NCBI GenBank assembly: GCA_044892505.1
Contig: CM097882.1
Location: 477,214,001 to 477,278,000 of the forward strand
Source: Schmidtea nova
Lineage: Eukaryota
Length of the DNA stretch: 64,000 bases
Direction: 5' to 3'
Under the pieces are notes generated by a model. That model worked only from the letters and a program-made list of their open reading frames with translations. It searched no databases and had not been told where the DNA came from. Shown here in pieces: positions 1 through 23,987 of this stretch. The translations under genes were made by a program, and so were the position numbers. Position 1 is the first letter of the stretch. Each line of letters opens with the position of its first letter.

Positions 1-3000
1 CATTAGAATTAATTTAGAAAAAATTAAGAGAAAATTCTAGAACAATTTGTTTTATTGCACTACCGGAGATAGAGAAAATTTGATGGTATATATACCGCCA
101 TCAAAATGGCAGATTTCAGATTTTGTGGAAAAAATTTTTTTGTTTTGCTAGCTAAGAGAATTTGTGAGAAGTTTTCCGAAAATTTTTATTGCTAACCTAA
201 TTAAAGAGAATTTGTACCATTTGCCTCAGAAATTTAGAATTGAAGATATTGTGGAAAGGATTCAATTTATTGGAAAATCGGAATTGGTCAAAATTTAGTT
301 CCCGGAGCACGAACCTTTTTAGTAGAAAACAAAATTTCTTCCTGGAGTTTGAAATGTTAGGTTTATTTTATTTTTGTTTTATTTTAAACTGATTCGAGGG
401 GTATGGGATCGTCGGTAATCATGCCTGTCGATCATCCCATTCCTCACGTTCGTATTATTTAAAAATGTATTATTTTTGTTATTTTATATAATGCAATTAT
501 TTTATTTTGATATTATTAAATATTAAAAATTTATTTTATTCAGTTTGATTTTGAAAATATTTTTGTTTATTATACTCACAAGTTCCCAAAACACCTAAAA
601 TTACTATGAGAATTGTCGAAATAAACTTATGAAATTAAATAATTTTTTTTATCTCCCATATCTTCTGACGATCCGTCCAGCCTTGGTTGTGCGGATCTGT
701 TAGTAGCCTGGGTGGATCGTTGTCTGATTGGTAATCGGCCAGCCCATATTTCCACTTTAAGGTGAGGCTCATACATCCAAATTCTCGTCATCCCAACTGG
801 GGAATCGTGGTTTGGCCAAGAGCAAGGTTTTGTTATACTAATGATTTTTATTATAATAGAGTATCATATTTTTATTATCTACATAAGCAATTTCGTAACA
901 CAACATAAAATCTTCTAATTCACGTCTTGAAATCTAAAATAGGAAATATTATTGATTAAAAAAAAAAAAAAAAAAAAAAAATCGACTCGTACTCACCTTC
1001 ACCTTCGCACTCTCAACAACGATCATCTCATGAGAAAATGCAAGAAAAATGGATGCTAACGATGAAAAGAAAATTGTTCGAATTAATGCTCAAGTCTAGA
1101 ATGATGCTCACGAAACGAAATGAATTGTGAAACAAGTATTGATTTAGTCTGAATTTAAGACTCATTATGGTCTAAATAAGTTTTTCCTGTGAATCTTGTT
1201 TTTCGAGAGCCTGAAATTCCTAAGTGAAGTGTCCCGAAAAATTCGCGTGCACTTTGATTGGGAAATTCATGCTCAACAAAACCGAAATTTACTTCACTTG
1301 ATGTTAAAAATATTCGTCGAAAAAGGTGTAACTTATTTTATTTTATTTTTTATTTTTATTTAGTATATAAATCTCTTTAGATTAAATGCATATTTAGATC
1401 TCGAAATTCATGGATAAAATATTTTTATTATTATTTCATTTTGATCAAGAATAAAAATTTGCTTTTTATTATACTGCAAAAATTTTAAAATGAAAAAATT
1501 ATAAACCAAAAAATGTTCCTAATATTATTAATATAAAAAAGATCTTATCATTTCATAAAATTCCAGAGAATTTGCAAATCAAAAGTTATATTAAACCCCA
1601 TAAAAATTATAGATTGAAAGTTTATTGTTATAGTAAAAATTCTTATTATTTTATAAAAATCTGAATTTGAAATTTTATAGAAAATTTTTTGGTTAATATA
1701 TATTCTAAAATATAAAAGGTTAAAAACCTATCTTATAAAAAAATTAAAAATTTTATCATTAGTAAATTTTTCATGAAACTATAAATACAAAAAAAATTTC
1801 ATAAAAAGCATTATAAAAATTATTATTATTATTTTAATTTAAAATTATTATTATTATGTTAAAATTATTTTATATAGTTTATTTAAATTATAATATAACC
1901 CCCCCCACGATATCTTAAAAATATTAATACATCACTCATTGCAAGAAATCACACCCTTTTCACTCAATAGCATCACCCATACTAATATACAAGCAACATA
2001 CATATAAAATACAATATACACACATACACCGTATCGTTCAATAACATTCAACAATCACATGCATACAAGCAAACCATACAGAAAATCTACACCGTTAGGT
2101 TAGTTAGCATCATATATCCATAGCTCATTCAGGCACTCGCTCAATCACATCCACATCGTTTATTTCATCCAACCGACCAATGAACACACCAACACATGCA
2201 TTTATAACAATAGGAAGTCCACCACCGAACTATAAAAGAAAAAAAAACATAAACGTGATTCACCACAATAGGTATTTCCCACAAATCTATAACAAAATAT
2301 AGCAGCCTCATTCACCTTCAGATCATCACCTTAGAAATTACTTTCATTCATCTGTGAACATACCTCGCTGACAATATAACTTCCAATACCACTACCCAAC
2401 AGTTGACAATGATTTATATATACCCCACTTCATATTTTAAAAAATTTTATAATAATAAAAAGACATTCAAGACAAAAAATTTATTGATAATAAACATCAT
2501 TCACAACAGTTCCAGAAAACAGTCTGGTAGGGATTTCCCATAAGGAAGTTGGTTCCGTTGAGGAGTAAAACAACATCCAATTTGGGTACGATTTCTCGAA
2601 AATATCCAATCGTACTATACGTCTGGCAGATATGAGAACGAAACAAAAAAATTAATTCCACAGAGCAACTGCCGCTTGCGACGATTGATAGATTTTATTT
2701 TTGTGGTTCCTCATCGGAAAGCTGCTGGAGAATTTTTATTTAAGCCCTCGAATTTAAAGGGAAAAGATATTGGTCTATCATAGACTTGGCATTGAACGAC
2801 GAACGTGGTGAATCTAGTGGCCTCTGAATCAAGTGATAATAAAGTAAAAATATATTGATAAATCTAAATTACCATTTTCGACGATGATAAATTTTCCAAT
2901 TGAGTAGAATTTCATAATAGGAATTTGAGAGAAATTAAATAAATAAATGATAATTCAAATTGTTATCATTTACAATTGAGGGGAAATAAATTTTTCTTCT

Positions 3001-3801
3001 GGTTCAAACAAGAAGAATATTTCCGTTTGGTAAATTGCACCTAATTTTGTTCCAAATAAATTTAAAAATGCAAAAAATTTTTTAAATTAAATTCAAGAAT
3101 TAAATAATTTCAAAAGACCGAAATCTGATGGTTATAAATTATAAGCAAAAGTTTTACTAAATCAATTTCGTTACTAAGGCCTCAGCAAAATTTTAAAATC
3201 AAAATATTGAAATTTTAATAAATATTTTATTATAAATTTAAAGCAAGATAGACAATAGGATTTGAATATAAATAAAGTTTACATAAATTTTAAATATAAA
3301 AAACATAACAATTTAAGGAAATTGCGATAATGATAAAAATTTGGGTCTAAATAAGAGCAATTTGTATATTCCCAAATATATACATTTTCTGAAGGAATAA
3401 TTGATCACCTATTTGAGTTGCGATAATATTTTCGAATGCATGTTGCGAATAGAGTAAAAGCGCTCGAATAAATTAATTGATTAATAAATAAATCACAGTT
3501 TGGCGAAAATACTCAAATAAAAATCTCGTAATAAACCTATACAGTGATAGAACAGATAAATTAAGGGGGACAAAAATGGGCAAGAAACCTTCTATCGGTA
3601 GCCCTTGGACCCAGGAGATATTCGGTCAATCATAGTTTCGTATTGACGACGCTCACTGATTGCGAATACCCACCCACTTGTTACAGTACCAACGTTACAT
3701 AGTGACGGGTAACAAGGTGGTAATTTCAATGTTTTATGTGTTGAGTTGTTGATGAGAGCCATAGAAACGTCAAGGTCATATTGACGGTCAACAACCCACC
3801 A
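1..3801 (+). repeat. 5' LTR (truncated by window start)
   Basis: Matches 20188-23987; in spot checks the only difference was a C8 vs C7 run (~1889 vs ~22086). Ends in CA and is followed by the PBS. Confidence 0.9.
3619..3801 (+). other. Structured U5-terminal element (three stem-loops), also at the 3' LTR end (~23805-23987) and in diverged copies
   Basis: Pairings: TATTCG..CAATCA/TGATTG-CGAATA with inner TCGT/ACGA hairpin; CCACTTGTTAC/GTAACAAGGTGG; GTTGTTGA/TCAACAAC enclosing CGTCAA/TTGACG. Confidence 0.6.
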
Positions 3802-3811
3802 TATAAAAATT

Positions 3812-3829
3812 TGGGGGCTCAGCCGGGAT
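3812..3829 (+). promoter_or_regulatory. Primer-binding site complementary to tRNA-Pro 3' end
   Basis: TGGGGGCTCAGCCGGGAT vs canonical Pro PBS TGGGGGCTCGTCCGGGAT (16/18), 10 nt after the LTR end; absent after the 3' LTR. Confidence 0.88.
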
Positions 3830-4105
3830 TATCTCGATTTAGCTAGTTTGTTTTGTGTGAAGCGAAAATCAATGGAAATGACTTTACGTGGAAGTTTGTT
3901 AATGTTTTTGCGTTGGAAAGATAAAAGTATTTTAAAGAAAAACGAGATTTGGTGAAAGTTTTATAAAAATCGATAATCATTTGAGTATTTTCGACGAAAA
4001 TGGAAAAAATTTATGCTTGATTATTAATATTATTTATATTACTATTATTATTTTTACGACAATAGTTATTTTATACCATTATAAGTATTATTATTAGGAT
4101 TATAA

Positions 4106-4259
4106 NNNNNNNNNNNNNNNNNNNNNNNNNNNNNNNNNNNNNNNNNNNNNNNNNNNNNNNNNNNNNNNNNNNNNNNNNNNNNNNNNNNNNNNNNNNNNNN
4201 NNNNNNNNNNNNNNNNNNNNNNNNNNNNNNNNNNNNNNNNNNNNNNNNNNNNNNNNNNN
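4106..4259. other. Assembly gap (N run)
   Basis: 154 N bases. Confidence 0.99.
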
Positions 4260-4919
4260 CATTGAGTAGAGAATTATAAGTAGAGAATATTATTTTAAGT
4301 ACCATTTTGAATTAAGATTTGGAAAAATTTGGAAAATAAAAAGTTCCGAATCAAAATCACCGCGAAAGCGAATAAAAGTTAAGCCGAAAAAACGATCTTT
4401 AAGCCCCACGAGCAGCCAATGATTGGAATTGAGAGCGAATAATAACAACAGAGCGTAGAATAAGTGTCTTTAATACAAATAAACGTCAAACATAGCATAG
4501 GATAAAAAGTCGAGCCGGAATGGGTCAAAAGTCTAAGAAAATCACGGGTAAAATAGTCAAAAATACCAAATCGCGACAAATGAACCCCGCGAACAACCAA
4601 TAATCGTAAAATTGTTCAAATAACGTCCATGGAGCGTAGAAAGTGAGTGTGCAACACCGGCAAGTGGAAAATACCTCGAAAGATAGAATATGACACCGGA
4701 ATCCGCAAAAAGTGTAGAAAATCGCCGCTAAGAAATTTAAAAGATTGAAGAAATTACGGAATTTTGACCCAAGAAAGCAGTAACACCAAGTATTAATGAT
4801 AGTGTAGATATCAGAATTATTATTATCATCATTTTAGTTGTGGAAACAGTAATTTGGTCAAATAATATAAAAATAAAACTGATTTATTATATTTTTATTA
4901 TAATTATTACGTAATAATA

Positions 4920-5160
4920 TATAAGAAATATATTGGGTGAATTGCCGTATAACGCGCATTATTATTATTATCATTATAATTATTATTATTACTATTATTA
5001 TTATCAATTTAGTTATTATTACTAGTAGTACTATAAGCATCTTAGTATAATTATTATTATTATTATTATTATTATCATTATTATTATTAATATTATTATT
5101 ATTACTGTTATTATCATGAGTGTTACTGTGGATGTCATTATTATTACTAACGATATCGAT
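4920..5160. repeat. (ATT)n-rich microsatellite/low complexity
   Basis: Repeated attattatt tracts; similar tract at ~9040-9090. Confidence 0.8.
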
Positions 5161-5924
5161 GTTATATTATTTGATTGAGAATGACTGAGGTATGACCCCT
5201 GTAATTTTATTTTTGTTGGCAGAGAGGGACATGGAAAGTATCGGGTCTAAAAGAAATAACGGCGAAAATGGAGCAATGCGTGAATTGTTTGTTTTAATTA
5301 ATATAATAATACAAGTAGAGAATGAATGATATAATCTAATAAGTTTGAAGTTTGAATGTTGCGAAAAATTAGATTGTTGAAGTCAAAATGATGCATGGTG
5401 ATATTGGAATGTTGATCGCGACTCAATTCGGGAATCGAAATCGGGTATAATTCAAAAATCTGATGAAATCATAAAATAATATCTAGTAACGACTTAAAAA
5501 AAACAAATATAATGATATAGAACCAAACAAGAAAACGTGAGACTTAACGTAAATACGAAAATCGTGAGATGCCCAAAATTAGGAACCTAGTAAAAGGAGA
5601 TGCTATATGACCATACGATACGGGATAGAGTTCACGCGAATCACTTAGGGAATAAATATTCGAATATACAAAATTGCTTTTAGTAAACAAAAAATTACCA
5701 AAAAATTGCGAATACTGTAAATAAAAAATATAATTATCTTAAAATTGATAAAAAGTGTAAAAATCATGAAAAAATTGTGTAAATAAATGTTCAATTATTT
5801 TTTATTTAGAAAATATTAGTATATAAAAAAAAATATAAAAAATCATAAAAATTATGTACATAATGGCTGATTATTTTAATATTTTATTCGAAAAATATCG
5901 AATATGGACGAATGGAGAAAATTA

Positions 5925-6570
5925 TAAAAATATAAAAATATAAAAAATATAAAAATACAAAAATATATGTATAAAAATGGCTGAATATTCTGTTAGTTAA
6001 AAATATAAAAATATAAAAATATAAAAATACAAAAATATATGTATAAAAATGGCTGAATATTCTGTTAGTTAAAAATATAAAAATATAAAAATACAAAAAT
6101 ATATGTATAAAAATGGCTGAATATTCTGTTAGTTAAAAATATAAAAATATAAAAATATAAAAATACAAAAATATATGTATAAAAATGGCTGAATATTCTG
6201 TTAGTTAAAAATATAAAAATATAAAAATATAAAAATACAAAAATATATGTATAAAAATGGCTGAATATTCTGTTAGTTAAAAATATAAAAATATAAAAAT
6301 ATAAAAATACAAAAATATATGTATAAAAATGGCTGAATATTCTGTTAGTTAAAAATATAAAAATATAAAAATATAAAAATACAAAAATATATGTATAAAA
6401 ATGGCTGAATATTCTGTTAGTTAAAAATATAAAAATATAAAAATATAAAAATACAAAAATATATGTATAAAAATGGCTGAATATTCTGTTAGTTAAAAAT
6501 ATAAAAATATAAAAATATAAAAATACAAAAATATATGTATAAAAATGGCTGAATATTCTGTTAGTAGTAG
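5925..6570. repeat. Tandem array, 9 units of ~72 bp (one 64 bp) inside the element leader
   Basis: Nine copies of ATGTATAAAAATGGCTGAATATTCTGTTAG separated by a variable number of 8-bp AAAAATAT modules. Confidence 0.95.
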
Positions 6571-6713
6571 TTTTGAAAAAATACAAAATATATAAAAAAT
6601 TATAAAAATTCGTGTACATAGCTGTTGAAGTTTTTATTATTTATTTTTCGTTCAAATCATAATGAATGGTTAATTCAAAAAGTTATAAACACCAGTCATC
6701 ATGAATATTTTAG

Positions 6714-7196
6714 ATGGAATCGATGGAGCATATTTTACTACGAATCGAGTTGTTTTTCGATTTTAAAAATGACCCATTGCAGGTGTTGAGCGAGAAACTC
6801 GAACGAGTAAATGGAATAAAAGATGAATTATTGTTGAATCCTAGACCACAACCCGAGAACCTAATAGTGATTGCAGGAATTGTGGGAACAACAAACGATA
6901 TTTCGTTGGAAATGATTTATGAATTACAACGATTGCGACTGAATAATCCGAATTTTAATCTAAAAATACAAGAATGGATTGGTAAAATCGATAAAATCAT
7001 GGACAAGCTAGAGAGATCGATAAATCAACAGAGCGATTCGTTCGAAAGATGTTATATTTGTCGACAAAAAGAAGCGAACATTTTATTCATGCCATGTGGG
7101 CATTTGTGCTATTGCCAGCCGTGCTCTAGAAAAATAAAGAGATGCGTAATCTGCAAACAGACAATTGATGACAAAATCATCGTATTTTGTTCGTAA
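6714..7196 (+). CDS. RING-finger (C3HC4, IAP/Mind-bomb-type) putative E3 ubiquitin ligase, 160 aa, no BIR domain
   Basis: C-terminal CYIC-x-ANILFMPCGHLCYCQPCSRKIKRCVICKQTI; acceptor TTTTAG directly before the ATG. Confidence 0.85.
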   Translation: MESMEHILLRIELFFDFKNDPLQVLSEKLERVNGIKDELLLNPRPQPENLIVIAGIVGTTNDISLEMIYELQRLRLNNPNFNLKIQEWIGKIDKIMDKLERSINQQSDSFERCYICRQKEANILFMPCGHLCYCQPCSRKIKRCVICKQTIDDKIIVFCS

Positions 7197-8240
7197 AGAA
7201 TGTCGTTCGAAATAAACGTTTTGGTCGTATTTAACTTCGTCGATCATCCAGTACTCCAAACCGTTAAAAAAAAAAAAAAAAAAAATTAAATAAACACAGA
7301 ACACTAGGTAATTAATAACTGAGAATCGTGAAAAAACATAACAAGTAACGGCTAATGCCGAAAAATCAAACATTAGGAAAATGGGAATTTGTGACAAAGT
7401 TACTTTTCTTTTCTTTTTGAATTTTCTTTATTATTATTATAAATCCTCCTCATAATTATTATTTTGAACCGAATTTCATTACTATAATCTTCCTTATTAC
7501 CATTATTATATTGATTATCATTATTATACTGATCATTATATATATAAATATGTATGTATTAGGACGAGCCATAAGTAGCGTTATAGAAGTTGATTTTATA
7601 AGGGAATCTTCCGAAATACAGTGAGAAATGAGTGTCTGAGTAGAAACGAGAAAATAGTCCACAAATTCATAACTGAGCTATCAAAAGATAGTACGCCAAG
7701 TTTTAACAGAGCTATCAAAAGATAGTACGTCAATATTTTTGTTGTTAAAAATTAGCAGACAACAAACGGGGAAAAACTTGATCACCTTGAGGAAAGAGAG
7801 TAGAATAGGATATCCATCGCATATGTTGGCGAAATTTCGTTTGTGACTGATCATCACAAATTGCGAAACGAGTTAACGCGATTATTTTACGATTTTGAAT
7901 TAGGTGAAAGGGCTTAACCCGTAATGTTCGTCTTATACACCAGTTTGCCAAGGCATGATTGGTACACTGAGGTAGAGGACAGTAACATTAATAAAGAGAA
8001 AGATGCTGCAGATTTTAGAAAGTCGAAAGAGTAAAAAGTGAATTTCGATGATTATAGTAGATGATAGTATAATAAGAAAAGATTCTACCATGGTAGTTAG
8101 GGAATTGATTCGTAATTGAGAAGTAGTAGAACAATTTGAGAAAAACAGTCAGCAACAGCGAATTTAGTTAAAAATTTGAGAATAGGGAAACGAGTGATTG
8201 AATAGCATAAAGAGAATAATCGAAGACGGCCGAGAAAAAA

Positions 8241-8788
8241 TTGAGAAACTTTGAGAGTTCATGTATGTGAGAGACTTTGAGAGTCCAGATAATTGAGAAA
8301 CTTTGAGAGTTCATGTATGTGAGAGACTTTGAGAGTCCAGATAATTGAGAAACTTTGAGAGTTCATGTATGTGAGAGACTTTGAGAGTCCAGATAATTGA
8401 GAAACTTTGAGAGTTCATGTATGTGAGAGACTTTGAGAGTCCAGATAATTGAGAGACTTTGAGAGTCCAGATAATTGAGAGACTTTGAGAGTCCAGATAA
8501 TTGAGAGACTTTGAGAGTCCAGATAATTGAGAGACTTTGAGAGTCCAGGTAATTTAGAGACTTTGAGAGTCCAGATAATTGAGCGCTCTGGGAGAGACTT
8601 TGAGAGTCCAGATAATTGAGAGACTTTGAGAGTCCAGATGATTGAGAAACTTTGAGAGTTCATGTATGAGAGACTTTGAGAGTCCAGATAATTGAGAAAC
8701 TTTGAGAGTTCATGTATGAGAGACTTTGAGAGTCCAGATAATTGAGAAACTTTGAGAGTTCATGTATGTGAGAGACTTTGAGAGTCCA
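8241..8788. repeat. Tandem array of ~21 x 26-bp monomers partly organised as 52-bp dimers
   Basis: Alternating TGAGAAACTTTGAGAGTTCATGTATG / TGAGAGACTTTGAGAGTCCAGATAAT units. Confidence 0.95.
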
Positions 8789-9551
8789 ATGTTTGTGGAT
8801 ATTGTTGAGAAATTTAGGAAAAACGTTTGAGAAATAGAATTAAATAAAACTGCAGTTATAATTTTGTTATGATAGAGAGAAACGTTGAACGCGAATACTT
8901 AAGGTGTAGTAAGATAAACCGTTAATAAGAGCAGATAAAAGACATCGAGAAATACTTAGGAAATAAAATAATGGCCATGAATAGATAACGAACAAGACAT
9001 TTTTCCTCGAATGCCGAGATGAGTATGATCATACTGTTATTATAGTATTAGTAATGTTATTATTATTGTTACTATTATTATTATTATTATCAGGGTATAG
9101 ATAATTGATACGACCATATAGATAATTATTACGAGATATAGATAATTTAAAATCTGAGCTCAGAGTAAAAGGGGGGTAAATGGCGTCGATGAAGAAGCGA
9201 TATTTTTATTTAGATTGTCCAACAGATCAAAGCCAAGCCAAGAGATAGTCAAATCAATCAGTTATTGAAGAGGTATATATAGAAGAAAAGAAGAAAAAGA
9301 AGTCTAATTGAAAAGGAAAGAAGTAAAAGAAAATAAATCAAAGAAGATCCAATTGAAGATAAAAGAAAGATCAGCAATCGATATTAAACACAAATTGACA
9401 ATATTACCAAACCAACCAAGTTCGTAAAGTCGAAAGATAAAGAGTCAAATCTATTAAAAACGACGAAAGGAAATTAAAAAGAAATAAAGCTGATAAATAA
9501 AGAAGTAAAATCCACAATATTAGAAAGTTTGTAGCCGATTTTCAGAAAGAA

Positions 9552-12662: not shown

Positions 12663-12856
12663 CAAGGAAAAGGATCTGTGTAAATATTGTATAAAAGTAT
12701 ATTGTAATAAAAGTAGTATGAAAATTGTGTAAATACTGTACAAATAATATGTTAACGAAAAAAATGGTTTAAAACGTAAAATTAATTGATGATGAAAAAA
12801 CAACAACTATACCCTGTCATAGAAATATTATTCCTTTCTAGAAGCTCTAATCAACA

Positions 12857-14454: not shown

Positions 14455-14904
14455 ATGAATTCGAACAACGAGAATCAAAGTTATCAAACATCAGTTCCAA
14501 CGTTCAATGAACCATCAAATCAAACTCAGTTTCCAGAAGATACCAATATACGAGAAAGAGAAAGGTCACTGCAAACCCCAGTAATCGAAAATGAAACGCA
14601 AAATCCAACAATTGACGATAGAAACCTGATATACCAAGTCGAAATTCCACTATTTGATGAAACCATGAACCCAATTCAAACGACATTCGTATTAAATCAA
14701 CAACCAACAAATAGCCAGACTCAATCAATATCAGCTCCGATGGTTTATCAGCAGACAATGACGCAAGAGTTATCATGGAAAACGCAATGTGAATTATTAA
14801 GCAGGATGTTGAATCAAGCCTATGCACAATGGAAAAATGAACAAGCTTTGTTAACAGAAAGTGTAAACAGAAATTTATTATATCTCCGTTATGCCGATCA
14901 ATAA
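14455..14904 (+). CDS. 149-aa Q/N/T/P-rich protein with C-terminal helix, unknown function
   Basis: Open frame; first ATG at 14455 lies 2 nt after a CAG acceptor (the track's TTG start at 14446 lies upstream of the acceptor). Confidence 0.7.
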   Translation: MNSNNENQSYQTSVPTFNEPSNQTQFPEDTNIRERERSLQTPVIENETQNPTIDDRNLIYQVEIPLFDETMNPIQTTFVLNQQPTNSQTQSISAPMVYQQTMTQELSWKTQCELLSRMLNQAYAQWKNEQALLTESVNRNLLYLRYADQ

Positions 14905-15038: not shown

Positions 15039-16586
15039 ATGAATATACAACAATTGATAGACATCCTAGATCAGGAGATGGCAAAAAGACAAGAGCAATT
15101 AGATCAAATGAGAAGCTGTGAACAAAGAATGGAAGCCATCCAAGAGAACGTTAAAATGATTGAAAAACGAACCCAAGAGATCAACAAAATAAAAGAAGAA
15201 AACGAGGAACTGCGAAAGATAATAAACGACAAGGCGCATATCGAAGCTGAATTAGACAATTATAAACGAGAGTACCGAGAAATGGAGAGAAAACTCGAGC
15301 ACGAACAACGAAAGTCGGTACCGTTGAAAAATCAAGCGAGATTAAGAAAAGACGAGCTCGAAACCTATAAAAGAGATACCGAAACAAGGTATGACAACTC
15401 CATAAGATTCTATCAGCAGCAACTCGAAAGTGAAAGAAATAGATATGAAGCCATGAAAAAGAAATGGGAAAAGTGTCGAGATGAAGCATTTGCTTTGAGA
15501 GGACAACCTCAAAAGAAGCTTAAAGTCAGAACAAGAAACATTGAACCTGAAAGCGAACAAGAAAAGATCATTAGAAAAGTTAAAGCAGAGGCTAGGAAAT
15601 GGAAACAAGAACACCAAGATTTATTGGAAATGGCTCGACACAGGAAAATGCTACAGGAAGAATTACTAAGACGGAGAGACGTTCAAATCGAGGCTCTGAA
15701 AGAGGAATGTCATTGGTATGCAGACATACGTCATGAGGAAACGGAGAAACTCAGAAAAGAAATATTCCAGTTGAAAACGAGCGGACAGTTCAGAGTAAGA
15801 AGCATAAAGCATCAAATAAAGTGGCTAATAGAACAAGCCAGAACATGGAAAAAGACCTGGAAAAGAACTCGAGACGAACTACGAGAATTCCCAAAGAAGC
15901 TGATGTCAATAAATGAAGCAGAATTGTGGGAAAATGCAGAAAAGCAAGAGATAGAAAACAAAGAATTAAAACGACAAGTTCAATTAAAAACTGAATGGAA
16001 TCAAAGGAGAATGAAATTTACCAGGAATCAAGAAGCTCGTATCAAATATCTGGAATTTGAAAACAGGCAATATGATCAACAGAAAAATATGGACGATAGA
16101 AGTATTGAAGAATTGACAATCGAATTGACTATTGCAAACCGTGAAGTCAACGGATATCGAGGAACAAATACTCATAAAGATATTGTCATTCAACACCAGC
16201 GACGGCAGATAGAAGAAACAAAGGCCGAATGTGAGAAAGCGATCCAGCAATCGCAGTATGAGATTGAGATGGCAATCCAAAGTTTGGAAGAAAACCGCCA
16301 AAACTATGAAAGAGAGATTGAAAGGTTAAAATATATGGAAAATACGAGAGAGCTCGAGATAGAAAAGGAACAGCTGAGTGAAGAACTCGATTATATGACA
16401 TATTTGCTAGATGAAGAGATAGAAATCTCAAGAACCTTGCGAGAAAGAGTTCAGAGCCTACAAAATCAACCTCCAATCATTCTATGGCCACTATATCCAA
16501 CACCAATACAACCTGTACATTTGGAGCAAGAAAATCCTCAAATCGAAGATGAAGGGTTCGGAGAAATTGAAGAGACGTTTGTATAA
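15039..16586 (+). CDS. 515-aa long coiled-coil protein, Pro-rich C-terminus
   Basis: Long E/K/R/Q-rich heptad ORF; TTTCAG acceptor 1 nt before ATG. Confidence 0.8.
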   Translation: MNIQQLIDILDQEMAKRQEQLDQMRSCEQRMEAIQENVKMIEKRTQEINKIKEENEELRKIINDKAHIEAELDNYKREYREMERKLEHEQRKSVPLKNQARLRKDELETYKRDTETRYDNSIRFYQQQLESERNRYEAMKKKWEKCRDEAFALRGQPQKKLKVRTRNIEPESEQEKIIRKVKAEARKWKQEHQDLLEMARHRKMLQEELLRRRDVQIEALKEECHWYADIRHEETEKLRKEIFQLKTSGQFRVRSIKHQIKWLIEQARTWKKTWKRTRDELREFPKKLMSINEAELWENAEKQEIENKELKRQVQLKTEWNQRRMKFTRNQEARIKYLEFENRQYDQQKNMDDRSIEELTIELTIANREVNGYRGTNTHKDIVIQHQRRQIEETKAECEKAIQQSQYEIEMAIQSLEENRQNYEREIERLKYMENTRELEIEKEQLSEELDYMTYLLDEEIEISRTLRERVQSLQNQPPIILWPLYPTPIQPVHLEQENPQIEDEGFGEIEETFV

Positions 16587-16716: not shown

Positions 16717-16868
16717 ATAAAAAGCAGAAAAAATAAAAAATCCAATAAAAATCAGAAAAAATGAAAAACAAATAAAAATTAGGTGATAAAAATGATAAAA
16801 ATGATAAAAACAAAAACAAAATTTAATAAAACTGTAGAAAAGAGTTATGAAAATTCAAATTATAGAGA

Positions 16869-17444
16869 ATGAGACTATTGAAGCAAAGATCAGAACCAGA
16901 ACAACAAACGATATCAAAAGAAAGATTCAAAAAACGGAAAAGAGCAACAGAACAATATTATCAAGACCAAATAGAGCAATTGAAGGAAGTAGTGAGCAAA
17001 GATAGAAAATATATCGCGCAAATGGAGCAAGAGTGCGAGACGATGGAAATAATCAAGCGCGAAAATTATCTATTTCGCCAACAAAATGGTCTTACCCAAA
17101 AATATTGCTACAGACAGAAGCAAGAGATTGACAGACTCAAAAGGGAAATAAGCAGTGAACAGAACACTGATAATAAAAGGAGGATTAAGATCGAGTCATT
17201 ACAACGATCATTGAAGAACAAACAGAAAAAGATTATAAAAAGAGAGAAACAGATAATAAAGTTGAAAAGTGAAATCATAGAAGCAAAATTCGATACGTTC
17301 AAAGCAAAGAAAGTTGTAGAAATTAAAACGGCAGAAAACTACGTCCTCAAAGAGAAAAGGCGAAAAGAAGCAGACGAGATTGCAAAAATGGGTAACTGGA
17401 AGCCAGAAAGTCCGTTAAAGCTAAATGAAGAGACGAAAGAATAA
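16869..17444 (+). CDS. 191-aa basic coiled-coil protein
   Basis: K/R/E/Q-rich ORF preceded by TATAG acceptor; AATAAA overlaps the stop. Confidence 0.75.
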   Translation: MRLLKQRSEPEQQTISKERFKKRKRATEQYYQDQIEQLKEVVSKDRKYIAQMEQECETMEIIKRENYLFRQQNGLTQKYCYRQKQEIDRLKREISSEQNTDNKRRIKIESLQRSLKNKQKKIIKREKQIIKLKSEIIEAKFDTFKAKKVVEIKTAENYVLKEKRRKEADEIAKMGNWKPESPLKLNEETKE

Positions 17445-17539
17445 AATATATCTAAACTCATGTAAATATCCCTGTAAAAATATCAAAGAGAAAATTTGAC
17501 AAATCATTAAACAAATTTGAATCTATAAATCTATAGAAA

Positions 17540-18364
17540 ATGAGCAATCTAATGAGGATCACAACAACCATCATGATATTTATGATTACAAACTGCCGAA
17601 GCGAAGAAGCATTGAGTCAATGTCAAGCAAGCCATCCATTTAGAAGATCCGATAGCATTTGTGCAAGCTATCAAGAAATGTGTATCACCAGAAATGAGGA
17701 GTGTCAACAGATCCAACTGCAATGTCAACAATGTCCAAAATCCAGAGAAGATTCAATCACTATTCTTAAACAGCTAAAAAACGAAACCCAACAATTAATC
17801 CAACTACAAATCTCCTTAACCCAAAGGAACAATCTTCAACTAAAGAAACAGCTCGAAAATCAATCATCTTTCAAACAGTTAACAACCGAACTAAAGAAAT
17901 TGAGCAAGTTAATAGAAAAATCTTTAAATAATAAAGATGAAGTTAATGAGGAACGATCAAGTTTTACAGAAGAGTTAAATCAAAAACTGAAAAGTCAACT
18001 TCATCAGACCGAGAGAATCATAAAACAATTGATATTACCCGAAAAGCAAAAGGAGATTATCCCTAAACAAGGATCAACCAACGAAGACGTCAGAGACCGA
18101 GAAGCAGCCATCACAGTCGTCCTACAAGGCATCAGTCTTTTCGCGGTCATAATGATCCTTAGCATTGTTGCATCAATCGGATTAGAAAAAATGAAATTAG
18201 AGAAAGCAAAAATCCAGTTGAATACAATCAAAAGAATCACCCATGAAGACAACAACCCGTCAGAAAATTTTCTAAGATCAATATTCGAAGATCCAGTTCC
18301 AGAACAGCCTAATCCTGAGACATCTACAACCTCGGTGCAGATGAATTACTTCTATAAACAATAA
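17540..18364 (+). CDS. 274-aa type I membrane protein: signal peptide, Cys-rich head, coiled-coil stalk, TM, tail
   Basis: MRITTTIMIFMITNC signal; six Cys in the head after the signal; Leu heptads; TM AITVVLQGISLFAVIMILSIVASIGL. Confidence 0.8.
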   Translation: MSNLMRITTTIMIFMITNCRSEEALSQCQASHPFRRSDSICASYQEMCITRNEECQQIQLQCQQCPKSREDSITILKQLKNETQQLIQLQISLTQRNNLQLKKQLENQSSFKQLTTELKKLSKLIEKSLNNKDEVNEERSSFTEELNQKLKSQLHQTERIIKQLILPEKQKEIIPKQGSTNEDVRDREAAITVVLQGISLFAVIMILSIVASIGLEKMKLEKAKIQLNTIKRITHEDNNPSENFLRSIFEDPVPEQPNPETSTTSVQMNYFYKQ

Positions 18365-18566
18365 TACGATTCTATTCCCTTTTGACAATTCATGTATTTT
18401 CTTCCATTCATTTAACCTATCTATCTATTTGTATTCTCATCTTTAACAATATTTCATCATCATTTAAATCATAACCCTGTGTAAAAATCGTAACACCCTT
18501 GTAAATAGCAAAAATTGTTTATCGTCATTATTCAATTTCTTTCTATTAGAAACACAAAAATCAACA

Positions 18567-19361
18567 ATGAAATCGTACCGAGAAGTTTTTCTAATCGCCA
18601 TGATCACAACAATTTATTGTCATCTCGAAGAAACCCAGAAATCAAGCCAATTAAACCCAAATCAACCAGATAATAAAGAACCATTTGAAATCTCTAACAA
18701 CAAACAACTATCCGAAAAGATTGAGCAAGCCAAAATCGAAATTCAAAATACCCTTTTCGATCAAAATGATGAAATTTCAGGTCTAAAAAGAATAGCAAGG
18801 ATAATATTAGCCGATTTAGCGATCAGAGATACATTCGAGGATATCTTTGATAATGATCGAGAAACCCGTGACGTAATAAAAAGTCTCACCAAAGAACTTA
18901 AAACGAATATAGGCAAGTTAATCGATCAGCTAACGATAAATTCATCAAGTCCGAAATGTCTGAAACAAATCCAGAAAATTCATCATAACCTGTCCCAGCA
19001 GATTTCCGAAGTAGGAAACCAAACGGCACAACAACTAAGAAAGGCTTATTTCGAAAGCCTGACATTTAAGAATAAAATCCACAATCACATAAACGAGATA
19101 TCGAAACCGGATAACAATCAAGGCAGAGACAAGTGCAGAGCACCCCTCCTATCATCCAAACGAATTCTCGATATCTGCCTGATCATCCTTAACTTTTTCC
19201 TAATAATCGGAATTTGTGGTATAATACGGTTAGGCTTGACCGCCACAAGAACGATGAACAACATGACCTCCAAACAATCCCGAAGAGAAGATGACAAGAA
19301 ACAGTTGATCGATACCGAGTCATTCAAACTATTCCAGTCGAAGATCCAACCAATTCAATAA
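18567..19361 (+). CDS. 264-aa type I membrane protein: signal peptide, helical ectodomain, TM, tail
   Basis: VFLIAMITTIYC signal; TM ILDICLIILNFFLIIGICGIIRLGL; size and topology parallel the preceding ORF. Confidence 0.8.
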   Translation: MKSYREVFLIAMITTIYCHLEETQKSSQLNPNQPDNKEPFEISNNKQLSEKIEQAKIEIQNTLFDQNDEISGLKRIARIILADLAIRDTFEDIFDNDRETRDVIKSLTKELKTNIGKLIDQLTINSSSPKCLKQIQKIHHNLSQQISEVGNQTAQQLRKAYFESLTFKNKIHNHINEISKPDNNQGRDKCRAPLLSSKRILDICLIILNFFLIIGICGIIRLGLTATRTMNNMTSKQSRREDDKKQLIDTESFKLFQSKIQPIQ

Positions 19362-20187
19362 TAAATTTGATAATTCAACAAACTTAATAAAACTTTTATC
19401 CGAGTCGTTGTAGACTCATATTGAACTTTGATTAGCCGCTGTAGGCACATATATTACATTTAATTTTGCTTGCGAGTCGATGCAGACTCATATTAATGTA
19501 TACGTATTAACTTTTTATTAATTTTTATCACTTTTTATTTTTTATTGTCGCGAACGGCATGATCACGACCAAGTAGCTCGTGTATAATGTACAACCTTTT
19601 GACCTTTGATTAGTCTTGGTTCTTAACCCCTCTGAGAAATTGCGGGACGCAATTTTTGCGGGCCCCCGAGTATTTTATGTTGGGCCAAAACCCAATTTGT
19701 TTTAATAAAACGATAACCCCATAGGTAGAGAACGCGCAAGATTCCATTTTTAACCTTAGCTTCCATTGAAAATCCAACAATTAAGTGGAAAACACCAAAA
19801 GGTGAAGATGAATCAAAACACAGCAACCGGTAGAATGCGCGCTAACTGCGAATTTATAAATATTTTCACTGAAATCTCGAGAAAAATTAAAAGCAGAATG
19901 TTTGGAAGCTAGAATAGGCAAAAAACCCATGGAAAGTGCCCATAAAGAACAGAATTTTGTCATAAAATCTTCAGTACAGAAAAATTAACAAAATTTTAGA
20001 AGAAAATTGTGAATTTATCACAAAATTTCACATTTAACAATAGAAAGAATTAATATGGATCGAATATCATAAATTAAATCAAATCGAACAAATTTCGATT
20101 CAAACATGAGAATTTTGAATTAAAATAAATTATTTATAGTTTATAAAAAATTATTATACAAAAATATGGAATTAATTTTCGGAAAAT

Positions 20188-23100
20188 CATTAGAATTAAT
20201 TTAGAAAAAATTAAGAGAAAATTCTAGAACAATTTGTTTTATTGCACTACCGGAGATAGAGAAAATTTGATGGTATATATACCGCCATCAAAATGGCAGA
20301 TTTCAGATTTTGTGGAAAAAATTTTTTTGTTTTGCTAGCTAAGAGAATTTGTGAGAAGTTTTCCGAAAATTTTTATTGCTAACCTAATTAAAGAGAATTT
20401 GTACCATTTGCCTCAGAAATTTAGAATTGAAGATATTGTGGAAAGGATTCAATTTATTGGAAAATCGGAATTGGTCAAAATTTAGTTCCCGGAGCACGAA
20501 CCTTTTTAGTAGAAAACAAAATTTCTTCCTGGAGTTTGAAATGTTAGGTTTATTTTATTTTTGTTTTATTTTAAACTGATTCGAGGGGTATGGGATCGTC
20601 GGTAATCATGCCTGTCGATCATCCCATTCCTCACGTTCGTATTATTTAAAAATGTATTATTTTTGTTATTTTATATAATGCAATTATTTTATTTTGATAT
20701 TATTAAATATTAAAAATTTATTTTATTCAGTTTGATTTTGAAAATATTTTTGTTTATTATACTCACAAGTTCCCAAAACACCTAAAATTACTATGAGAAT
20801 TGTCGAAATAAACTTATGAAATTAAATAATTTTTTTTATCTCCCATATCTTCTGACGATCCGTCCAGCCTTGGTTGTGCGGATCTGTTAGTAGCCTGGGT
20901 GGATCGTTGTCTGATTGGTAATCGGCCAGCCCATATTTCCACTTTAAGGTGAGGCTCATACATCCAAATTCTCGTCATCCCAACTGGGGAATCGTGGTTT
21001 GGCCAAGAGCAAGGTTTTGTTATACTAATGATTTTTATTATAATAGAGTATCATATTTTTATTATCTACATAAGCAATTTCGTAACACAACATAAAATCT
21101 TCTAATTCACGTCTTGAAATCTAAAATAGGAAATATTATTGATTAAAAAAAAAAAAAAAAAAAAAAAATCGACTCGTACTCACCTTCACCTTCGCACTCT
21201 CAACAACGATCATCTCATGAGAAAATGCAAGAAAAATGGATGCTAACGATGAAAAGAAAATTGTTCGAATTAATGCTCAAGTCTAGAATGATGCTCACGA
21301 AACGAAATGAATTGTGAAACAAGTATTGATTTAGTCTGAATTTAAGACTCATTATGGTCTAAATAAGTTTTTCCTGTGAATCTTGTTTTTCGAGAGCCTG
21401 AAATTCCTAAGTGAAGTGTCCCGAAAAATTCGCGTGCACTTTGATTGGGAAATTCATGCTCAACAAAACCGAAATTTACTTCACTTGATGTTAAAAATAT
21501 TCGTCGAAAAAGGTGTAACTTATTTTATTTTATTTTTTATTTTTATTTAGTATATAAATCTCTTTAGATTAAATGCATATTTAGATCTCGAAATTCATGG
21601 ATAAAATATTTTTATTATTATTTCATTTTGATCAAGAATAAAAATTTGCTTTTTATTATACTGCAAAAATTTTAAAATGAAAAAATTATAAACCAAAAAA
21701 TGTTCCTAATATTATTAATATAAAAAAGATCTTATCATTTCATAAAATTCCAGAGAATTTGCAAATCAAAAGTTATATTAAACCCCATAAAAATTATAGA
21801 TTGAAAGTTTATTGTTATAGTAAAAATTCTTATTATTTTATAAAAATCTGAATTTGAAATTTTATAGAAAATTTTTTGGTTAATATATATTCTAAAATAT
21901 AAAAGGTTAAAAACCTATCTTATAAAAAAATTAAAAATTTTATCATTAGTAAATTTTTCATGAAACTATAAATACAAAAAAAATTTCATAAAAAGCATTA
22001 TAAAAATTATTATTATTATTTTAATTTAAAATTATTATTATTATGTTAAAATTATTTTATATAGTTTATTTAAATTATAATATAACCCCCCCACGATATC
22101 TTAAAAATATTAATACATCACTCATTGCAAGAAATCACACCCTTTTCACTCAATAGCATCACCCATACTAATATACAAGCAACATACATATAAAATACAA
22201 TATACACACATACACCGTATCGTTCAATAACATTCAACAATCACATGCATACAAGCAAACCATACAGAAAATCTACACCGTTAGGTTAGTTAGCATCATA
22301 TATCCATAGCTCATTCAGGCACTCGCTCAATCACATCCACATCGTTTATTTCATCCAACCGACCAATGAACACACCAACACATGCATTTATAACAATAGG
22401 AAGTCCACCACCGAACTATAAAAGAAAAAAAAACATAAACGTGATTCACCACAATAGGTATTTCCCACAAATCTATAACAAAATATAGCAGCCTCATTCA
22501 CCTTCAGATCATCACCTTAGAAATTACTTTCATTCATCTGTGAACATACCTCGCTGACAATATAACTTCCAATACCACTACCCAACAGTTGACAATGATT
22601 TATATATACCCCACTTCATATTTTAAAAAATTTTATAATAATAAAAAGACATTCAAGACAAAAAATTTATTGATAATAAACATCATTCACAACAGTTCCA
22701 GAAAACAGTCTGGTAGGGATTTCCCATAAGGAAGTTGGTTCCGTTGAGGAGTAAAACAACATCCAATTTGGGTACGATTTCTCGAAAATATCCAATCGTA
22801 CTATACGTCTGGCAGATATGAGAACGAAACAAAAAAATTAATTCCACAGAGCAACTGCCGCTTGCGACGATTGATAGATTTTATTTTTGTGGTTCCTCAT
22901 CGGAAAGCTGCTGGAGAATTTTTATTTAAGCCCTCGAATTTAAAGGGAAAAGATATTGGTCTATCATAGACTTGGCATTGAACGACGAACGTGGTGAATC
23001 TAGTGGCCTCTGAATCAAGTGATAATAAAGTAAAAATATATTGATAAATCTAAATTACCATTTTCGACGATGATAAATTTTCCAATTGAGTAGAATTTCA

Positions 23101-23987
23101 TAATAGGAATTTGAGAGAAATTAAATAAATAAATGATAATTCAAATTGTTATCATTTACAATTGAGGGGAAATAAATTTTTCTTCTGGTTCAAACAAGAA
23201 GAATATTTCCGTTTGGTAAATTGCACCTAATTTTGTTCCAAATAAATTTAAAAATGCAAAAAATTTTTTAAATTAAATTCAAGAATTAAATAATTTCAAA
23301 AGACCGAAATCTGATGGTTATAAATTATAAGCAAAAGTTTTACTAAATCAATTTCGTTACTAAGGCCTCAGCAAAATTTTAAAATCAAAATATTGAAATT
23401 TTAATAAATATTTTATTATAAATTTAAAGCAAGATAGACAATAGGATTTGAATATAAATAAAGTTTACATAAATTTTAAATATAAAAAACATAACAATTT
23501 AAGGAAATTGCGATAATGATAAAAATTTGGGTCTAAATAAGAGCAATTTGTATATTCCCAAATATATACATTTTCTGAAGGAATAATTGATCACCTATTT
23601 GAGTTGCGATAATATTTTCGAATGCATGTTGCGAATAGAGTAAAAGCGCTCGAATAAATTAATTGATTAATAAATAAATCACAGTTTGGCGAAAATACTC
23701 AAATAAAAATCTCGTAATAAACCTATACAGTGATAGAACAGATAAATTAAGGGGGACAAAAATGGGCAAGAAACCTTCTATCGGTAGCCCTTGGACCCAG
23801 GAGATATTCGGTCAATCATAGTTTCGTATTGACGACGCTCACTGATTGCGAATACCCACCCACTTGTTACAGTACCAACGTTACATAGTGACGGGTAACA
23901 AGGTGGTAATTTCAATGTTTTATGTGTTGAGTTGTTGATGAGAGCCATAGAAACGTCAAGGTCATATTGACGGTCAACAACCCACCA
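20188..23987 (+). repeat. 3' LTR (portion verifiable against the 5' copy). True start lies between 19362 and 20188; candidate TGTTGGG at 19678 would give ~4.3 kb
   Basis: Direct repeat of 1-3801. TGTTGGG is a 6/7 inverted match to the terminal CCCACCA. The start cannot be fixed because the 5' LTR start is outside the window. Confidence 0.88.

What the first reader, a model, noticed from the sequence alone, without database searches (positions are those of the whole stretch)
1..23987. Giant pol-less LTR element carrying an eight-gene cargo rich in cell-surface and ubiquitin-pathway proteins
Seen: LTRs of at least 3.8 kb, a Pro PBS, about 16 kb of internal sequence and eight co-oriented intronless ORFs. 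No RT (YxDD), RNase H, integrase or CCHC Gag motif appears in any ORF. Known: giant gypsy-type elements with multi-kb LTRs and extra ORFs exist (plant Ogre, planarian Burro), so size alone is not new. Inference: this is a non-autonomous gene-carrier (satellite-like) retroelement. Its cargo of three membrane proteins, a RING E3, an Ubl-protease-ankyrin protein and coiled coils may form a particle/cell-contact system or manipulate host cells.
Basis: partly seen in the sequence, partly recalled or inferred. Interest (0 to 1): 0.92.

Follow-up and report, generated by a model that had tools for sequence, protein, structure and literature searches.

The report
Giant LTR retroelement without reverse transcriptase
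A young, roughly 24-kb retrovirus-like element in an AT-rich animal genome keeps its long terminal repeats, a primer-binding site, a retroviral protease and seven other intact genes. It has no detectable reverse transcriptase or integrase, so it most likely depends on a related "giant" element of the kind known from planarians.

Summary
Window 1-3801 and 20188-23987 are direct repeats, 99.92% identical, and the left copy is cut by the window start. The repeat end is a real element terminus: it is shared with two diverged LTR fragments elsewhere in the window. An 18-nt PBS-like site lies 10 nt after the left repeat. Eight intact co-oriented ORFs fill 6714-19361.

Three independent tests found no RT, RNase H, integrase or CCHC Gag in the readable sequence. 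"Pol-less" is still only partly right, because ORF2 carries a retropepsin. The only non-ankyrin relative among the 150 listed hits is the protease of an Env-PR-RT-RH-IN retroelement polyprotein.

The domain set is an IAP-type RING, a weak Ubl match, protease, ankyrin, coiled coils and membrane proteins. It echoes the published accessory repertoire of planarian Burro elements, so it looks like lineage-own genes rather than captured cargo.

This is an operon-like, multicistronic layout.

Best reading (confidence about 0.55): a helper-dependent, RT/IN-less derivative of a Burro-like giant gypsy-type element. The main caveat is the assembly gap at 4106-4259, which sits where gag-pol would be expected. 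Copy number, LTR start and TSD could not be tested.

The parts
1..3801 (+). 5' LTR, cut by the window start (at least 3.8 kb); ends in CA
   Evidence: 99.92% identical to 20188-23987. Its terminus is shared with the diverged copies at 28902 and 36344-36406.
3590..3801 (+). Conserved, structured U5-like end of the LTR
   Evidence: This is the best conserved part between diverged LTR copies (80-87%, against 63-67% upstream). The fold z-score is -3.35. Three compensatory pairs are seen, but between only two sequences, which is weak evidence.
3812..3829 (+). PBS-like 18-mer starting with TGG, 10 nt after the LTR end
   Evidence: Read directly. Unique in the window with up to 3 mismatches, 0 expected by chance. 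The tRNA isotype was not verified.
3830..6713 (+). Long non-coding leader containing the assembly gap (4106-4259), an ATT microsatellite and a 72-nt x 9 tandem array (5925-6565)
   Evidence: No Pfam match in any open segment of 35 aa or more.
4106..4259 (.). Assembly gap (154 N, length only estimated); not filled or looked up
   Evidence: The flanks are AT-rich and closed in all six frames within 17 codons.
6714..7196 (+). ORF1, 160 aa: IAP-type C3HC4 RING (7050-7154) with no BIR domain
   Evidence: PF13920 at 7.4e-14. The closest solved RINGs are cIAP2, cIAP1 and XIAP, 2e-10 to 5e-7. All eight zinc ligands are present.
8239..8797 (+). 26/52-nt tandem array in the 2.35-kb spacer between ORF1 and ORF2
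9552..12662 (+). ORF2, 1036 aa. Contains a weak Ubl-like match (10266-10409), a retropepsin (10560-10841; DTGA at 10608-10619), ankyrin repeats (about 11274-11666), an acidic tract, a hydrophobic segment (12279-12317) and a Cys-containing C-terminus.
   Evidence: Pfam, PDB ankyrin hits and PR similarity to P0144. The Ubl match is only E 0.025. AlphaFold2 of this segment failed.
12857..14305 (+). ORF3, 482 aa: signal-peptide-like N-terminus, EGF-like six-Cys pattern (13502-13600), one transmembrane segment (14174-14242) and a short tail
   Evidence: No homologue, no PDB hit, no similarity to the Env of P0144. The AlphaFold2 model was unusable, pLDDT 35.
14455..14904 (+). ORF4, 149 aa from the first ATG (the tool's TTG start is 14446); Q/N/T/P-rich; the weakest gene call
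   Evidence: Its length alone is within the chance range. It has both the upstream acceptor-like signal and the downstream UGUA module.
15039..16586 (+). ORF5, 515 aa: highly charged, coiled-coil-like
   Evidence: K+R+D+E make up 41%. Only sub-threshold coiled-coil Pfam matches.
16869..17444 (+). ORF6, 191 aa: basic, coiled-coil-like
   Evidence: K+R = 51 of 191 residues.
17540..18364 (+). ORF7, 274 aa: signal-like N-terminus, helical region, transmembrane segment (18116-18172)
   Evidence: No similarity to ORF8.
18567..19361 (+). ORF8, 264 aa: signal-like N-terminus, helical region, transmembrane segment (19170-19226)
12679..12696 (+). UGUA-rich gene-end module after ORF2. Equivalent modules are at 14320-14337, 14921-14938, 16601-16620 (variant) and 17461-17479, with a displaced pair at 18480/18500.
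   Evidence: The first TGTAWA lies +15 to +17 nt after the stops of ORF2 to ORF6. The bipartite pattern occurs 4 times in 64 kb, all just after stops, against 0.03 expected (the pattern was derived post hoc). Alignment.
19362..20187 (+). 3' untranslated internal region plus the unseen start of the 3' LTR. The one candidate short polypurine tract, at 19998-20006, is unverified.
   Evidence: The boundary cannot be placed, because the left LTR start is outside the window.
20188..23987 (+). 3' LTR (the part that can be matched to the left copy)

Best explanation
This is a recently integrated member of a giant LTR retroelement lineage of the Ty3/gypsy, Burro-like kind, in an AT-rich metazoan genome that is plausibly a planarian. 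It has two near-identical LTRs of about 4 kb, a PBS-like site, a long repeat-rich leader and eight intact genes. It has no reverse transcriptase, RNase H, integrase or zinc-knuckle Gag of its own.

Inferred mechanism:
- The full-length LTR-to-LTR transcript is the template.
- It is reverse-transcribed and integrated by enzymes from an autonomous relative that recognises the same conserved LTR end and PBS region.
- The element's own products are a retropepsin-ankyrin polyprotein, an IAP-type RING ligase, coiled-coil proteins and three type I membrane proteins. They are made from processed sub-transcripts.
- Each ORF has a pyrimidine-tract-plus-AG acceptor just before its ATG, and ORF2-ORF6 each have a UGUA-rich 3'-end module right after the stop. 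This is like a flatworm operon resolved by splicing or spliced-leader trans-splicing and internal polyadenylation.

Shown: the repeats, the terminus, the PBS-like site, the ORFs, the domains, the absence of RT/IN in readable sequence, and the junction motifs.
Inferred: helper dependence, kinship to Burro, the expression mode and the protein functions.
For: - LTR pair at 99.92% identity.
- The terminus is shared by diverged copies, with the last ~250 nt the best conserved part.
- PBS-like site unique in the window.
- ORFs far beyond chance length.
- Retropepsin in ORF2 with DTGA and IIGTD. It is 28-31% identical to the protease of P0144, whose Pfam architecture is fusion glycoprotein, 3 x PR, RT, RNase H and integrase.
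- No RT/RH/IN/gag by Pfam six-frame scan, tblastn or motif search.
- The domain set matches that described for Burro elements, which also carry tandem repeats (PMC6431247).
- A-rich sense strand: A 41-49% against T 16-24% in ORF2-ORF8 (ORF1 is milder, A 37%, T 28%). The two host exons have A and T about equal.
- Gene-end modules at +15 to +17 nt after five consecutive stops.
- YAG within 6 nt upstream of 6 of 8 ATGs, against a 17% background (P about 5e-4). Within 17 nt it is 8 of 8, against 35% (P about 2e-4). The upstream tracts are pyrimidine-rich.
- Spacers between ORF2 and ORF8 are 95-283 nt, close to the ~100-bp modal spacing of flatworm operons (PMC8629364).
Against: - The assembly gap at 4106-4259 lies 276 nt after the PBS, exactly where gag-pol normally starts. 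Its length is only estimated, and it may be a scaffold join.
- Only one full copy is visible. The LTR start, PPT and TSD are unseen, so family-level propagation is unproven.
- No Burro sequence was available, so kinship rests on one protease match and on a published domain list.
- The Ubl match is sub-threshold.
- ORF2 and ORF3 have no detectable full-length homologues, and ORF1 and ORF4-ORF8 were not searched beyond Pfam (ORF1 also against PDB).
- Both structure predictions failed.
- The junction motifs were defined after seeing them.
- The host's identity as a planarian is not demonstrated.
Confidence: 0.55

Rival explanations
1. The element is autonomous. Its gag-pol lies in sequence missing at the assembly gap, either because the gap is much longer than estimated or because the scaffold joins two contigs from different places in a longer element.
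For: The gap sits 276 nt downstream of the PBS, where gag-pol normally begins. Published Burro elements have internal regions of up to 25 kb, against about 16 kb here (PMC6431247). Repeat-rich giant elements are typical places for assemblies to break.
Against: The stated gap is 154 nt, and the other gap in the window is 133 nt. These sizes look measured rather than placeholders, whereas at least 2.5-3 kb would be needed. Both flanks are AT-rich low-complexity sequence, closed in all frames. No partial gag or pol runs into the gap from either side. The protease sits 6.3 kb downstream in ORF2, detached from any RT.
Confidence: 0.15
2. This is a one-off defective provirus. An autonomous element integrated recently and then lost gag-pol by internal deletion or recombination. 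It is a dead copy, not a propagating helper-dependent family.
For: Only one full copy is seen. The 5.7 kb between the PBS and ORF2 is mostly non-coding, with three tandem arrays. That is what a rearranged region could look like.
Against: LTRs at 99.92% identity leave little time for such a loss. All eight ORFs and their junction signals are intact. No truncated pol remnant marks a deletion junction. The protease is embedded in a complete ORF with ankyrin repeats rather than being a stump.
Confidence: 0.2
3. This is not one mobile element. It is a cluster of host genes caught between two LTR copies of the same family, or a segmental or tandem duplication with a period of about 20.2 kb whose left part is outside the window.
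For: The left repeat is cut by the window start, so a longer duplicated unit cannot be excluded directly. The TSD is untestable.
Against: A PBS-like site sits right after the left repeat. The repeat ends exactly at a terminus shared with independent diverged copies. The ORFs are intronless, tightly packed, co-oriented and compositionally unlike the host exons in the same window, which are short and widely spaced. One ORF encodes a retroelement-type protease.
Confidence: 0.07

Closest known systems
Burro / GYPSM1 giant Ty3/gypsy-like LTR retroelements of planarians (Grohme et al. 2018; reviewed in PMC6431247)
   Same: - Multi-kb LTRs and internal tandem repeats in an AT-rich host.
- Retropepsin.
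- Accessory RING, SUMO/Ubl-like (PF11976), ankyrin and Smc-like coiled-coil domains tied to ubiquitin and apoptosis pathways.
- ORF1's RING is of the IAP type, and Burro carries BIR/IAP motifs.
- Membrane glycoprotein-like products.
   Different: - No RT, RNase H, integrase, dUTPase, retrotrans_gag/CCHC, MATH, BCL2 or BIR domain detected.
- No Monjiviricetes-type Env.
- The domains are spread over eight separate cistrons instead of one polyprotein of about 4,900 aa.
- The internal region is about 16 kb rather than up to 25 kb.
- Direct sequence homology to Burro could not be tested.
Non-autonomous LTR retrotransposons (LARD, TRIM, BARE-2-type)
   Same: LTRs plus a PBS without their own RT/IN; mobilisation by an autonomous partner that shares cis signals; conserved LTR ends.
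   Different: Those elements are non-coding or carry a crippled gag-pol. This one keeps about 9 kb of intact, organised coding sequence, including a protease.
Replication-defective, helper-dependent retroviruses and complex retroviruses with accessory genes
   Same: Loss of pol functions with retention of LTRs and PBS; extra genes that act on host pathways; accessory ORFs reached through splice acceptors placed just upstream of each ORF.
   Different: Those have far fewer extra genes, and their mRNAs are 3'-co-terminal. Here each of ORF2-ORF6 appears to have its own 3'-end module. No helper has been identified.
Spliced-leader operons of flatworms and nematodes
   Same: Co-oriented genes about 100-300 nt apart. 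Each is preceded by an unpaired acceptor close to the ATG and follows a 3'-end signal (PMC8629364).
   Different: Known operons are host gene clusters, not the interior of an LTR retroelement. Use of a spliced leader here is inferred only.
DDI1/DDI2 (Ubl plus retropepsin proteins)
   Same: ORF2 has a possible Ubl just upstream of a retropepsin. The best solved-structure matches to the protease segment are DDI1.
   Different: Those matches are weak (E about 0.09). The retroelement protease of P0144 matches better. ORF2 has no UBA/HDD domain and carries ankyrin repeats instead.

Membership tests
LTR retrotransposon / endogenous retrovirus-like element | Two direct long terminal repeats | tested here: met
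   1-3801 against 20188-23987, 99.92% identical
LTR retrotransposon / endogenous retrovirus-like element | TG...CA termini | tested here: inconclusive
   The 3' CA is present at 3800-3801 and 23986-23987 and in the diverged copy at 28902. The 5' start lies outside the window or is unresolved.
LTR retrotransposon / endogenous retrovirus-like element | Target-site duplication | not testable with these tools
   The left flank is outside the window.
LTR retrotransposon / endogenous retrovirus-like element | tRNA primer-binding site next to the 5' LTR | tested here: met
   An 18-mer beginning TGG at 3812-3829, 10 nt after the LTR, unique in the window. The isotype (Pro) was not verified.
LTR retrotransposon / endogenous retrovirus-like element | Polypurine tract before the 3' LTR | tested here: inconclusive
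   Only a 9-nt purine run at 19998-20006. The LTR start is unknown.
Autonomous Ty3/gypsy (Metaviridae-like) | RT, RNase H and integrase | tested here: not met
   Not found in readable sequence; the gap is untested.
Autonomous Ty3/gypsy (Metaviridae-like) | Gag with CCHC knuckle | tested here: not met
   No retrotrans_gag or zf-CCHC in Pfam. No CCHC pattern in any of the six frames.
Autonomous Ty3/gypsy (Metaviridae-like) | Retropepsin | tested here: met
   RVP at 23.6 bits, above its cut-off of 20.7. DTGA and IIGTD are present. Matches the PR of P0144.
Burro (planarian giant gypsy-like) | Accessory RING, Ubl, ankyrin and coiled-coil domains | tested here: met
   RING 7e-14 and ankyrin 4e-10 are solid. 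Ubl is sub-threshold (0.025), and the coiled coils are called by composition only. The comparison is with the published list (PMC6431247).
Burro (planarian giant gypsy-like) | One giant Gag-...-Env-PR-RT-RH-IN polyprotein with an in-frame Env | tested here: not met
   Eight separate ORFs. No Monjiviricetes_fusion match.
Burro (planarian giant gypsy-like) | Sequence homology to Burro LTRs or proteins; planarian host | not testable with these tools
   No Burro sequence was on hand and fetching one is barred. The host is inferred only from about 30% GC, large introns and metazoan exons.
LARD/TRIM-type non-autonomous LTR elements | No protein-coding capacity | tested here: not met
   Eight intact ORFs
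IAP family (for ORF1) | At least one BIR domain | tested here: not met
   Only the C-terminal RING matches
DDI1-like (for ORF2) | Ubl plus retropepsin plus HDD/UBA | tested here: inconclusive
   The retropepsin is present. The Ubl is weak. No UBA/HDD domain; ankyrin repeats instead.

The most novel reading that the evidence does not exclude
A "satellite" of giant planarian retroelements. It has shed RT and integrase but keeps its own protease, membrane proteins, coiled-coil proteins and an IAP-like RING ligase. It expresses them as an operon inside the provirus through splice acceptors, possibly by spliced-leader trans-splicing, and internal 3'-end signals, while relying on an autonomous relative for replication. 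This would be a retroelement counterpart of helper-dependent viral satellites, with a self-contained host-manipulation and surface gene set.
Probability: 0.25. Interest if true: 0.8.

Novelty: new variant of a known kind. Interest (0 to 1): 0.55.

Why it matters
Giant LTR elements of flatworms are already the size record holders among retrotransposons, and they are suspected of tampering with host ubiquitin and apoptosis pathways.

A young copy that has lost the replication enzymes but keeps about 9 kb of intact, neatly punctuated genes would show two things. First, this accessory repertoire can be maintained and spread separately from RT and integrase. Second, a retroelement interior can be organised like a flatworm operon.

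It would also give a compact, testable set of eight proteins for asking what these elements do in their hosts. If the gap instead hides gag-pol, the finding reduces to one more Burro-like element with an unusual split gene layout.

Tried and rejected
- **Protein searches.** Word-based searches with ORF2 (whole, and residues 225-450) and with ORF3 were all blank. phmmer of ORF2 against 1.84 billion representatives listed its best 150 hits. All but one match only the ankyrin repeats. The exception is P0144, which matches the protease. P0030, an integrase-plus-ankyrin protein, matches ORF2 only in generic ankyrin repeats.
- **Structure.** Both AlphaFold2 jobs ran without an alignment and failed: ORF3 at pLDDT 35.5 and ORF2 residues 222-445 at pLDDT 29.7. 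No fold search was run, so the Ubl fold and any Env-like fold remain untested.
- **PBS isotype.** I scanned genome contigs with the complement of the PBS to find a matching tRNA gene. It returned only chance hits in GC-rich bacteria, and none of the 60 loci I scanned has a tRNA gene at the match. "Pro" therefore rests on memory alone.
- **tRNA and Rfam.** No tRNA genes and no Rfam family in the window.
- **ORF comparisons.** ORF3 shows no similarity to the fusion glycoprotein of P0144. ORF7 and ORF8 are not paralogues. No diverged copies of any ORF exist elsewhere in the window.
- **LTR start and PPT.** Neither could be placed.
- **Literature.** The Grohme et al. 2018 paper is not held.


Full report
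**1. The observation**

A self-comparison shows that window 1-3809 matches 20188-23995 at 99.92% identity, with 2 mismatches and 1 indel. Reading the ends directly puts the shared end at 3801/23987. The eight further matching bases are A-rich chance.

The left copy starts at base 1 of the window, so the repeat is at least 3.8 kb. Its true start lies somewhere between the stop of ORF8 (19361) and 20188, which caps it at about 4.63 kb.

The end of the repeat is a genuine element terminus. The same last bases, ending in CA, close a diverged copy at 28902. That copy is 87% identical over the last ~250 nt and 63-67% further in, back to about 27037. A 63-nt fragment at 36344-36406 also carries most of the terminus.

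Ten bases after the left repeat there is an 18-nt site beginning with TGG (3812-3829). It is unique in the window even with three mismatches allowed. It looks like a tRNA primer-binding site, but I could not verify that the tRNA is Pro. A scan with its complement returned only chance matches in GC-rich bacterial genomes, and none of the 60 loci I scanned has a tRNA gene at the match.

**2. The gap, tested first**

The run of N at 4106-4259 is flanked by AT-rich, low-complexity sequence. In all six frames the reading frame closes within 17 codons of either edge. No readable ORF is therefore interrupted by it.

What cannot be decided from the window is whether the two sides are contiguous, or how long the missing stretch really is. 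This matters because the gap lies only 276 nt after the PBS, where gag-pol of an LTR element normally begins.

**3. The genes**

Eight + strand ORFs occupy 6714-19361. Between 9552 and 19361, 89% of the sequence is coding on one strand. In 300 composition-matched simulations the longest open frame averaged 97 codons, with a maximum of 163. The observed ORFs are 1036, 515, 482, 274, 264 and 191 codons.

- **ORF1 (160 aa)** is short, but it has a clear IAP-type RING: PF13920 at 7e-14, with cIAP1, cIAP2 and XIAP as the closest solved RINGs. It has no BIR domain.
- **ORF2 (1036 aa)** carries a retropepsin, with RVP above its Pfam cut-off, DTGA at residues 353-356 and IIGTD at 421. It also has ankyrin repeats (4e-10). 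A SUMO/ubiquitin-like match just upstream of the protease is only sub-threshold, PF11976 at E 0.025.
- **ORF3 (482 aa)** has a signal-like N-terminus, an EGF-like six-cysteine pattern and one strong C-terminal transmembrane segment.
- **ORF7 and ORF8** have the same overall topology as ORF3 but are unrelated to each other.
- **ORF5 and ORF6** are highly charged and coiled-coil-like. ORF6 is strongly basic.
- **ORF4 (149 aa)** is the weakest call.

**4. What is missing**

Pfam found no RT, RNase H, integrase or Gag in the eight ORFs. It found none in any of the 128 open segments of 35 aa or more outside them, in all six frames of 1-9560 and 19300-20187.

A tblastn with P0144, a complete fusion-glycoprotein, PR, RT, RNase H and integrase polyprotein, matched only the ORF2 protease inside the element. 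Its integrase matched two unrelated fragments further along the window.

Pattern scans of all six frames found one DTGA and no CCHC, YxDD or HHCC motif. "Pol-less" overlooks the protease.

**5. Relatives**

Word-based protein searches with ORF2 and ORF3 were blank. An exhaustive phmmer of ORF2 listed its best 150 hits. All but one match only the ankyrin repeats. The exception is P0144 (2855 aa), whose three protease copies align with the ORF2 protease at 25-31% identity. The protease is thus of the LTR-retroelement kind. DDI1 matches are much weaker.

The literature supplies the best frame. Planarian Burro/GYPSM1 elements are giant gypsy-like LTR elements with internal tandem repeats. Their polyprotein carries a RING, an Smc-like coiled coil, MATH, PF11976 Ubl, BCL2-like, Env, PR, dUTPase, RT-RH-IN, BIR and ankyrin motifs (PMC6431247).

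The window element has a subset of that repertoire: RING, possibly Ubl, PR, ankyrin and coiled coils, plus tandem arrays at 5925-6565 and 8239-8797. These are split into separate genes, and the replication enzymes are absent.

The host context fits but does not prove a planarian. GC is about 30%. The neighbours are metazoan exons separated by long TE-rich introns: an adenosine-deaminase last exon at 30249-30527, and RNF41-like exons at 37026-37352 and 52068-52427.

The sense strand of ORF2-ORF8 is strongly A-rich (A 41-49%, T 16-24%), and ORF1 is milder (A 37%, T 28%). The two host exons have A and T about equal. This argues that the genes are old residents of a retroelement rather than fresh captures.

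**6.

After the stops of ORF2, 3, 4, 5 and 6, the first TGTAWA lies at +15 to +17 nt and a second at +22 to +29. A bipartite form of the motif occurs four times in the whole 64-kb window, each time right after one of these stops, against 0.03 expected. I derived that pattern after seeing the sites, so the statistic flatters it; the positional regularity does not depend on it. TGTAWA is about 20-fold denser in the 120 nt after stops than inside coding sequence. For ORF7 the pair is displaced, to 18480/18500.

Upstream, every ATG is preceded by a pyrimidine-rich tract and AG. The mean pyrimidine fraction is 0.64, against 0.37-0.41 for all AGs (resampling P below 5e-5). A YAG ends within 6 nt of 6 of the 8 ATGs, against 17% of other ATGs (P about 5e-4). 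Within 17 nt it is 8 of 8, against 35% (P about 2e-4).

Spacers between ORF2 and ORF8 are 95-283 nt. This is the layout of a flatworm operon, where the modal spacing is about 100 bp and genes are resolved by spliced-leader trans-splicing (PMC8629364). It could equally be a complex retrovirus with one leader donor and many acceptors. Which of the two applies, and whether the UGUA modules are poly(A)-site or Pumilio-type elements, is inference.

**7. The LTR end**

The last ~210 nt of the LTR is the best conserved part between diverged copies. It folds better than shuffled controls (z = -3.35). It shows three compensatory pairs, but between only two sequences. That is what one expects of a U5/att region kept under constraint by shared replication machinery, though the evidence is thin.

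**8. Verdict**

The most likely reading (about 0.55) is a young, helper-dependent, RT/IN-less derivative of a Burro-like giant LTR retroelement with a multicistronic interior.

The rivals are:
- gag-pol hidden at the gap or scaffold join (about 0.15);
- a one-off provirus that lost gag-pol after integration (about 0.2);
- a host gene cluster or segmental duplication between LTR copies (about 0.07).

Novelty: a new variant of a known kind.

**9. Limits and disclosure**

Both structure predictions failed, having no alignment to work from, so no fold comparison was made. One search, an exact look-up of ORF2, was made before I had judged the element to be virus-like. It returned nothing and was not repeated.

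Noticed in passing
window 23988-24340 and 24375-24395: Right after the 3' LTR the flank is a 15-nt tandem array (about 19-22 copies). It is followed by long A runs and a C-run/G-run palindrome. The element seems to have landed in, or next to, satellite-like sequence.
   Followed up: partly
window 27037-28903: A diverged LTR of a related family, 63-67% identical over most of its length and 80-87% over the last 250-320 nt. It ends at the same terminus and has no PBS after it, so it is a solo or 3' LTR remnant. It contains a 173-codon open stretch (27599-28117) of low-complexity translation with no Pfam match.
   Followed up: partly
window 36344-36406: A 63-nt fragment 92% identical to the extreme end of the LTR. 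It sits alone, about 620 nt upstream of the host RING exon.
   Followed up: no
window 30249-30527 (+): Last exon of an adenosine-deaminase-like gene (PF00962 positions 241-329 of 330, E 8e-20), on the same strand 6.3 kb downstream of the element. The element could sit in an intron of this gene or just upstream of it; earlier exons were not found.
   Followed up: partly
window 37026-37352 and 52068-52427 (+): RING exon and USP8-interacting-domain exon (E 4e-32) of an RNF41/NRDP1-like E3 ligase gene. They are about 15 kb apart, and the intron between them is full of transposon debris.
   Followed up: partly
window 48831-49712 (+) and 63647-63949 (-): Fragments of gypsy-type integrase. The first has an H2C2 zinc domain and part of the core in a 293-aa ORF. 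The second is a weak core match at the window end. Neither has an RT nearby and neither resembles the LTR studied here.
   Followed up: partly
window 38252-38521 (-) and 59767-60129 (+): DNA-transposon remnants: a hAT dimerisation domain at the first site. The second, a CENP-B/pogo-type N-terminal DNA-binding domain, is placed from the look of the ORF's translation; the Pfam match was not tied to a segment.
   Followed up: no
window 44617-44749: A second assembly gap (133 N) inside the RNF41-like intron. It was not filled or looked up.
   Followed up: no
window 12660-12736 vs 14303-14379: The 3' flanks of ORF2 and ORF3 resemble each other over about 60 nt, well beyond the short UGUA motif, as if a whole 3' UTR module had been duplicated. 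ORF3 and ORF8 also share the same 8 nt before the ATG.
   Followed up: partly
window 9564-9658: A 48-nt tandem duplication inside the start of ORF2 gives a repeated 16-residue acidic motif at the N-terminus of the protein.
   Followed up: no
window 40980-41845, 41263-41492 / 46061-46290, 34656-34870 / 50903-51117, 25855-26325: Several other dispersed or local repeats of 200-300 nt at 96-97% identity, plus one 108-nt inverted pair. They probably belong to other transposon families.
   Followed up: no
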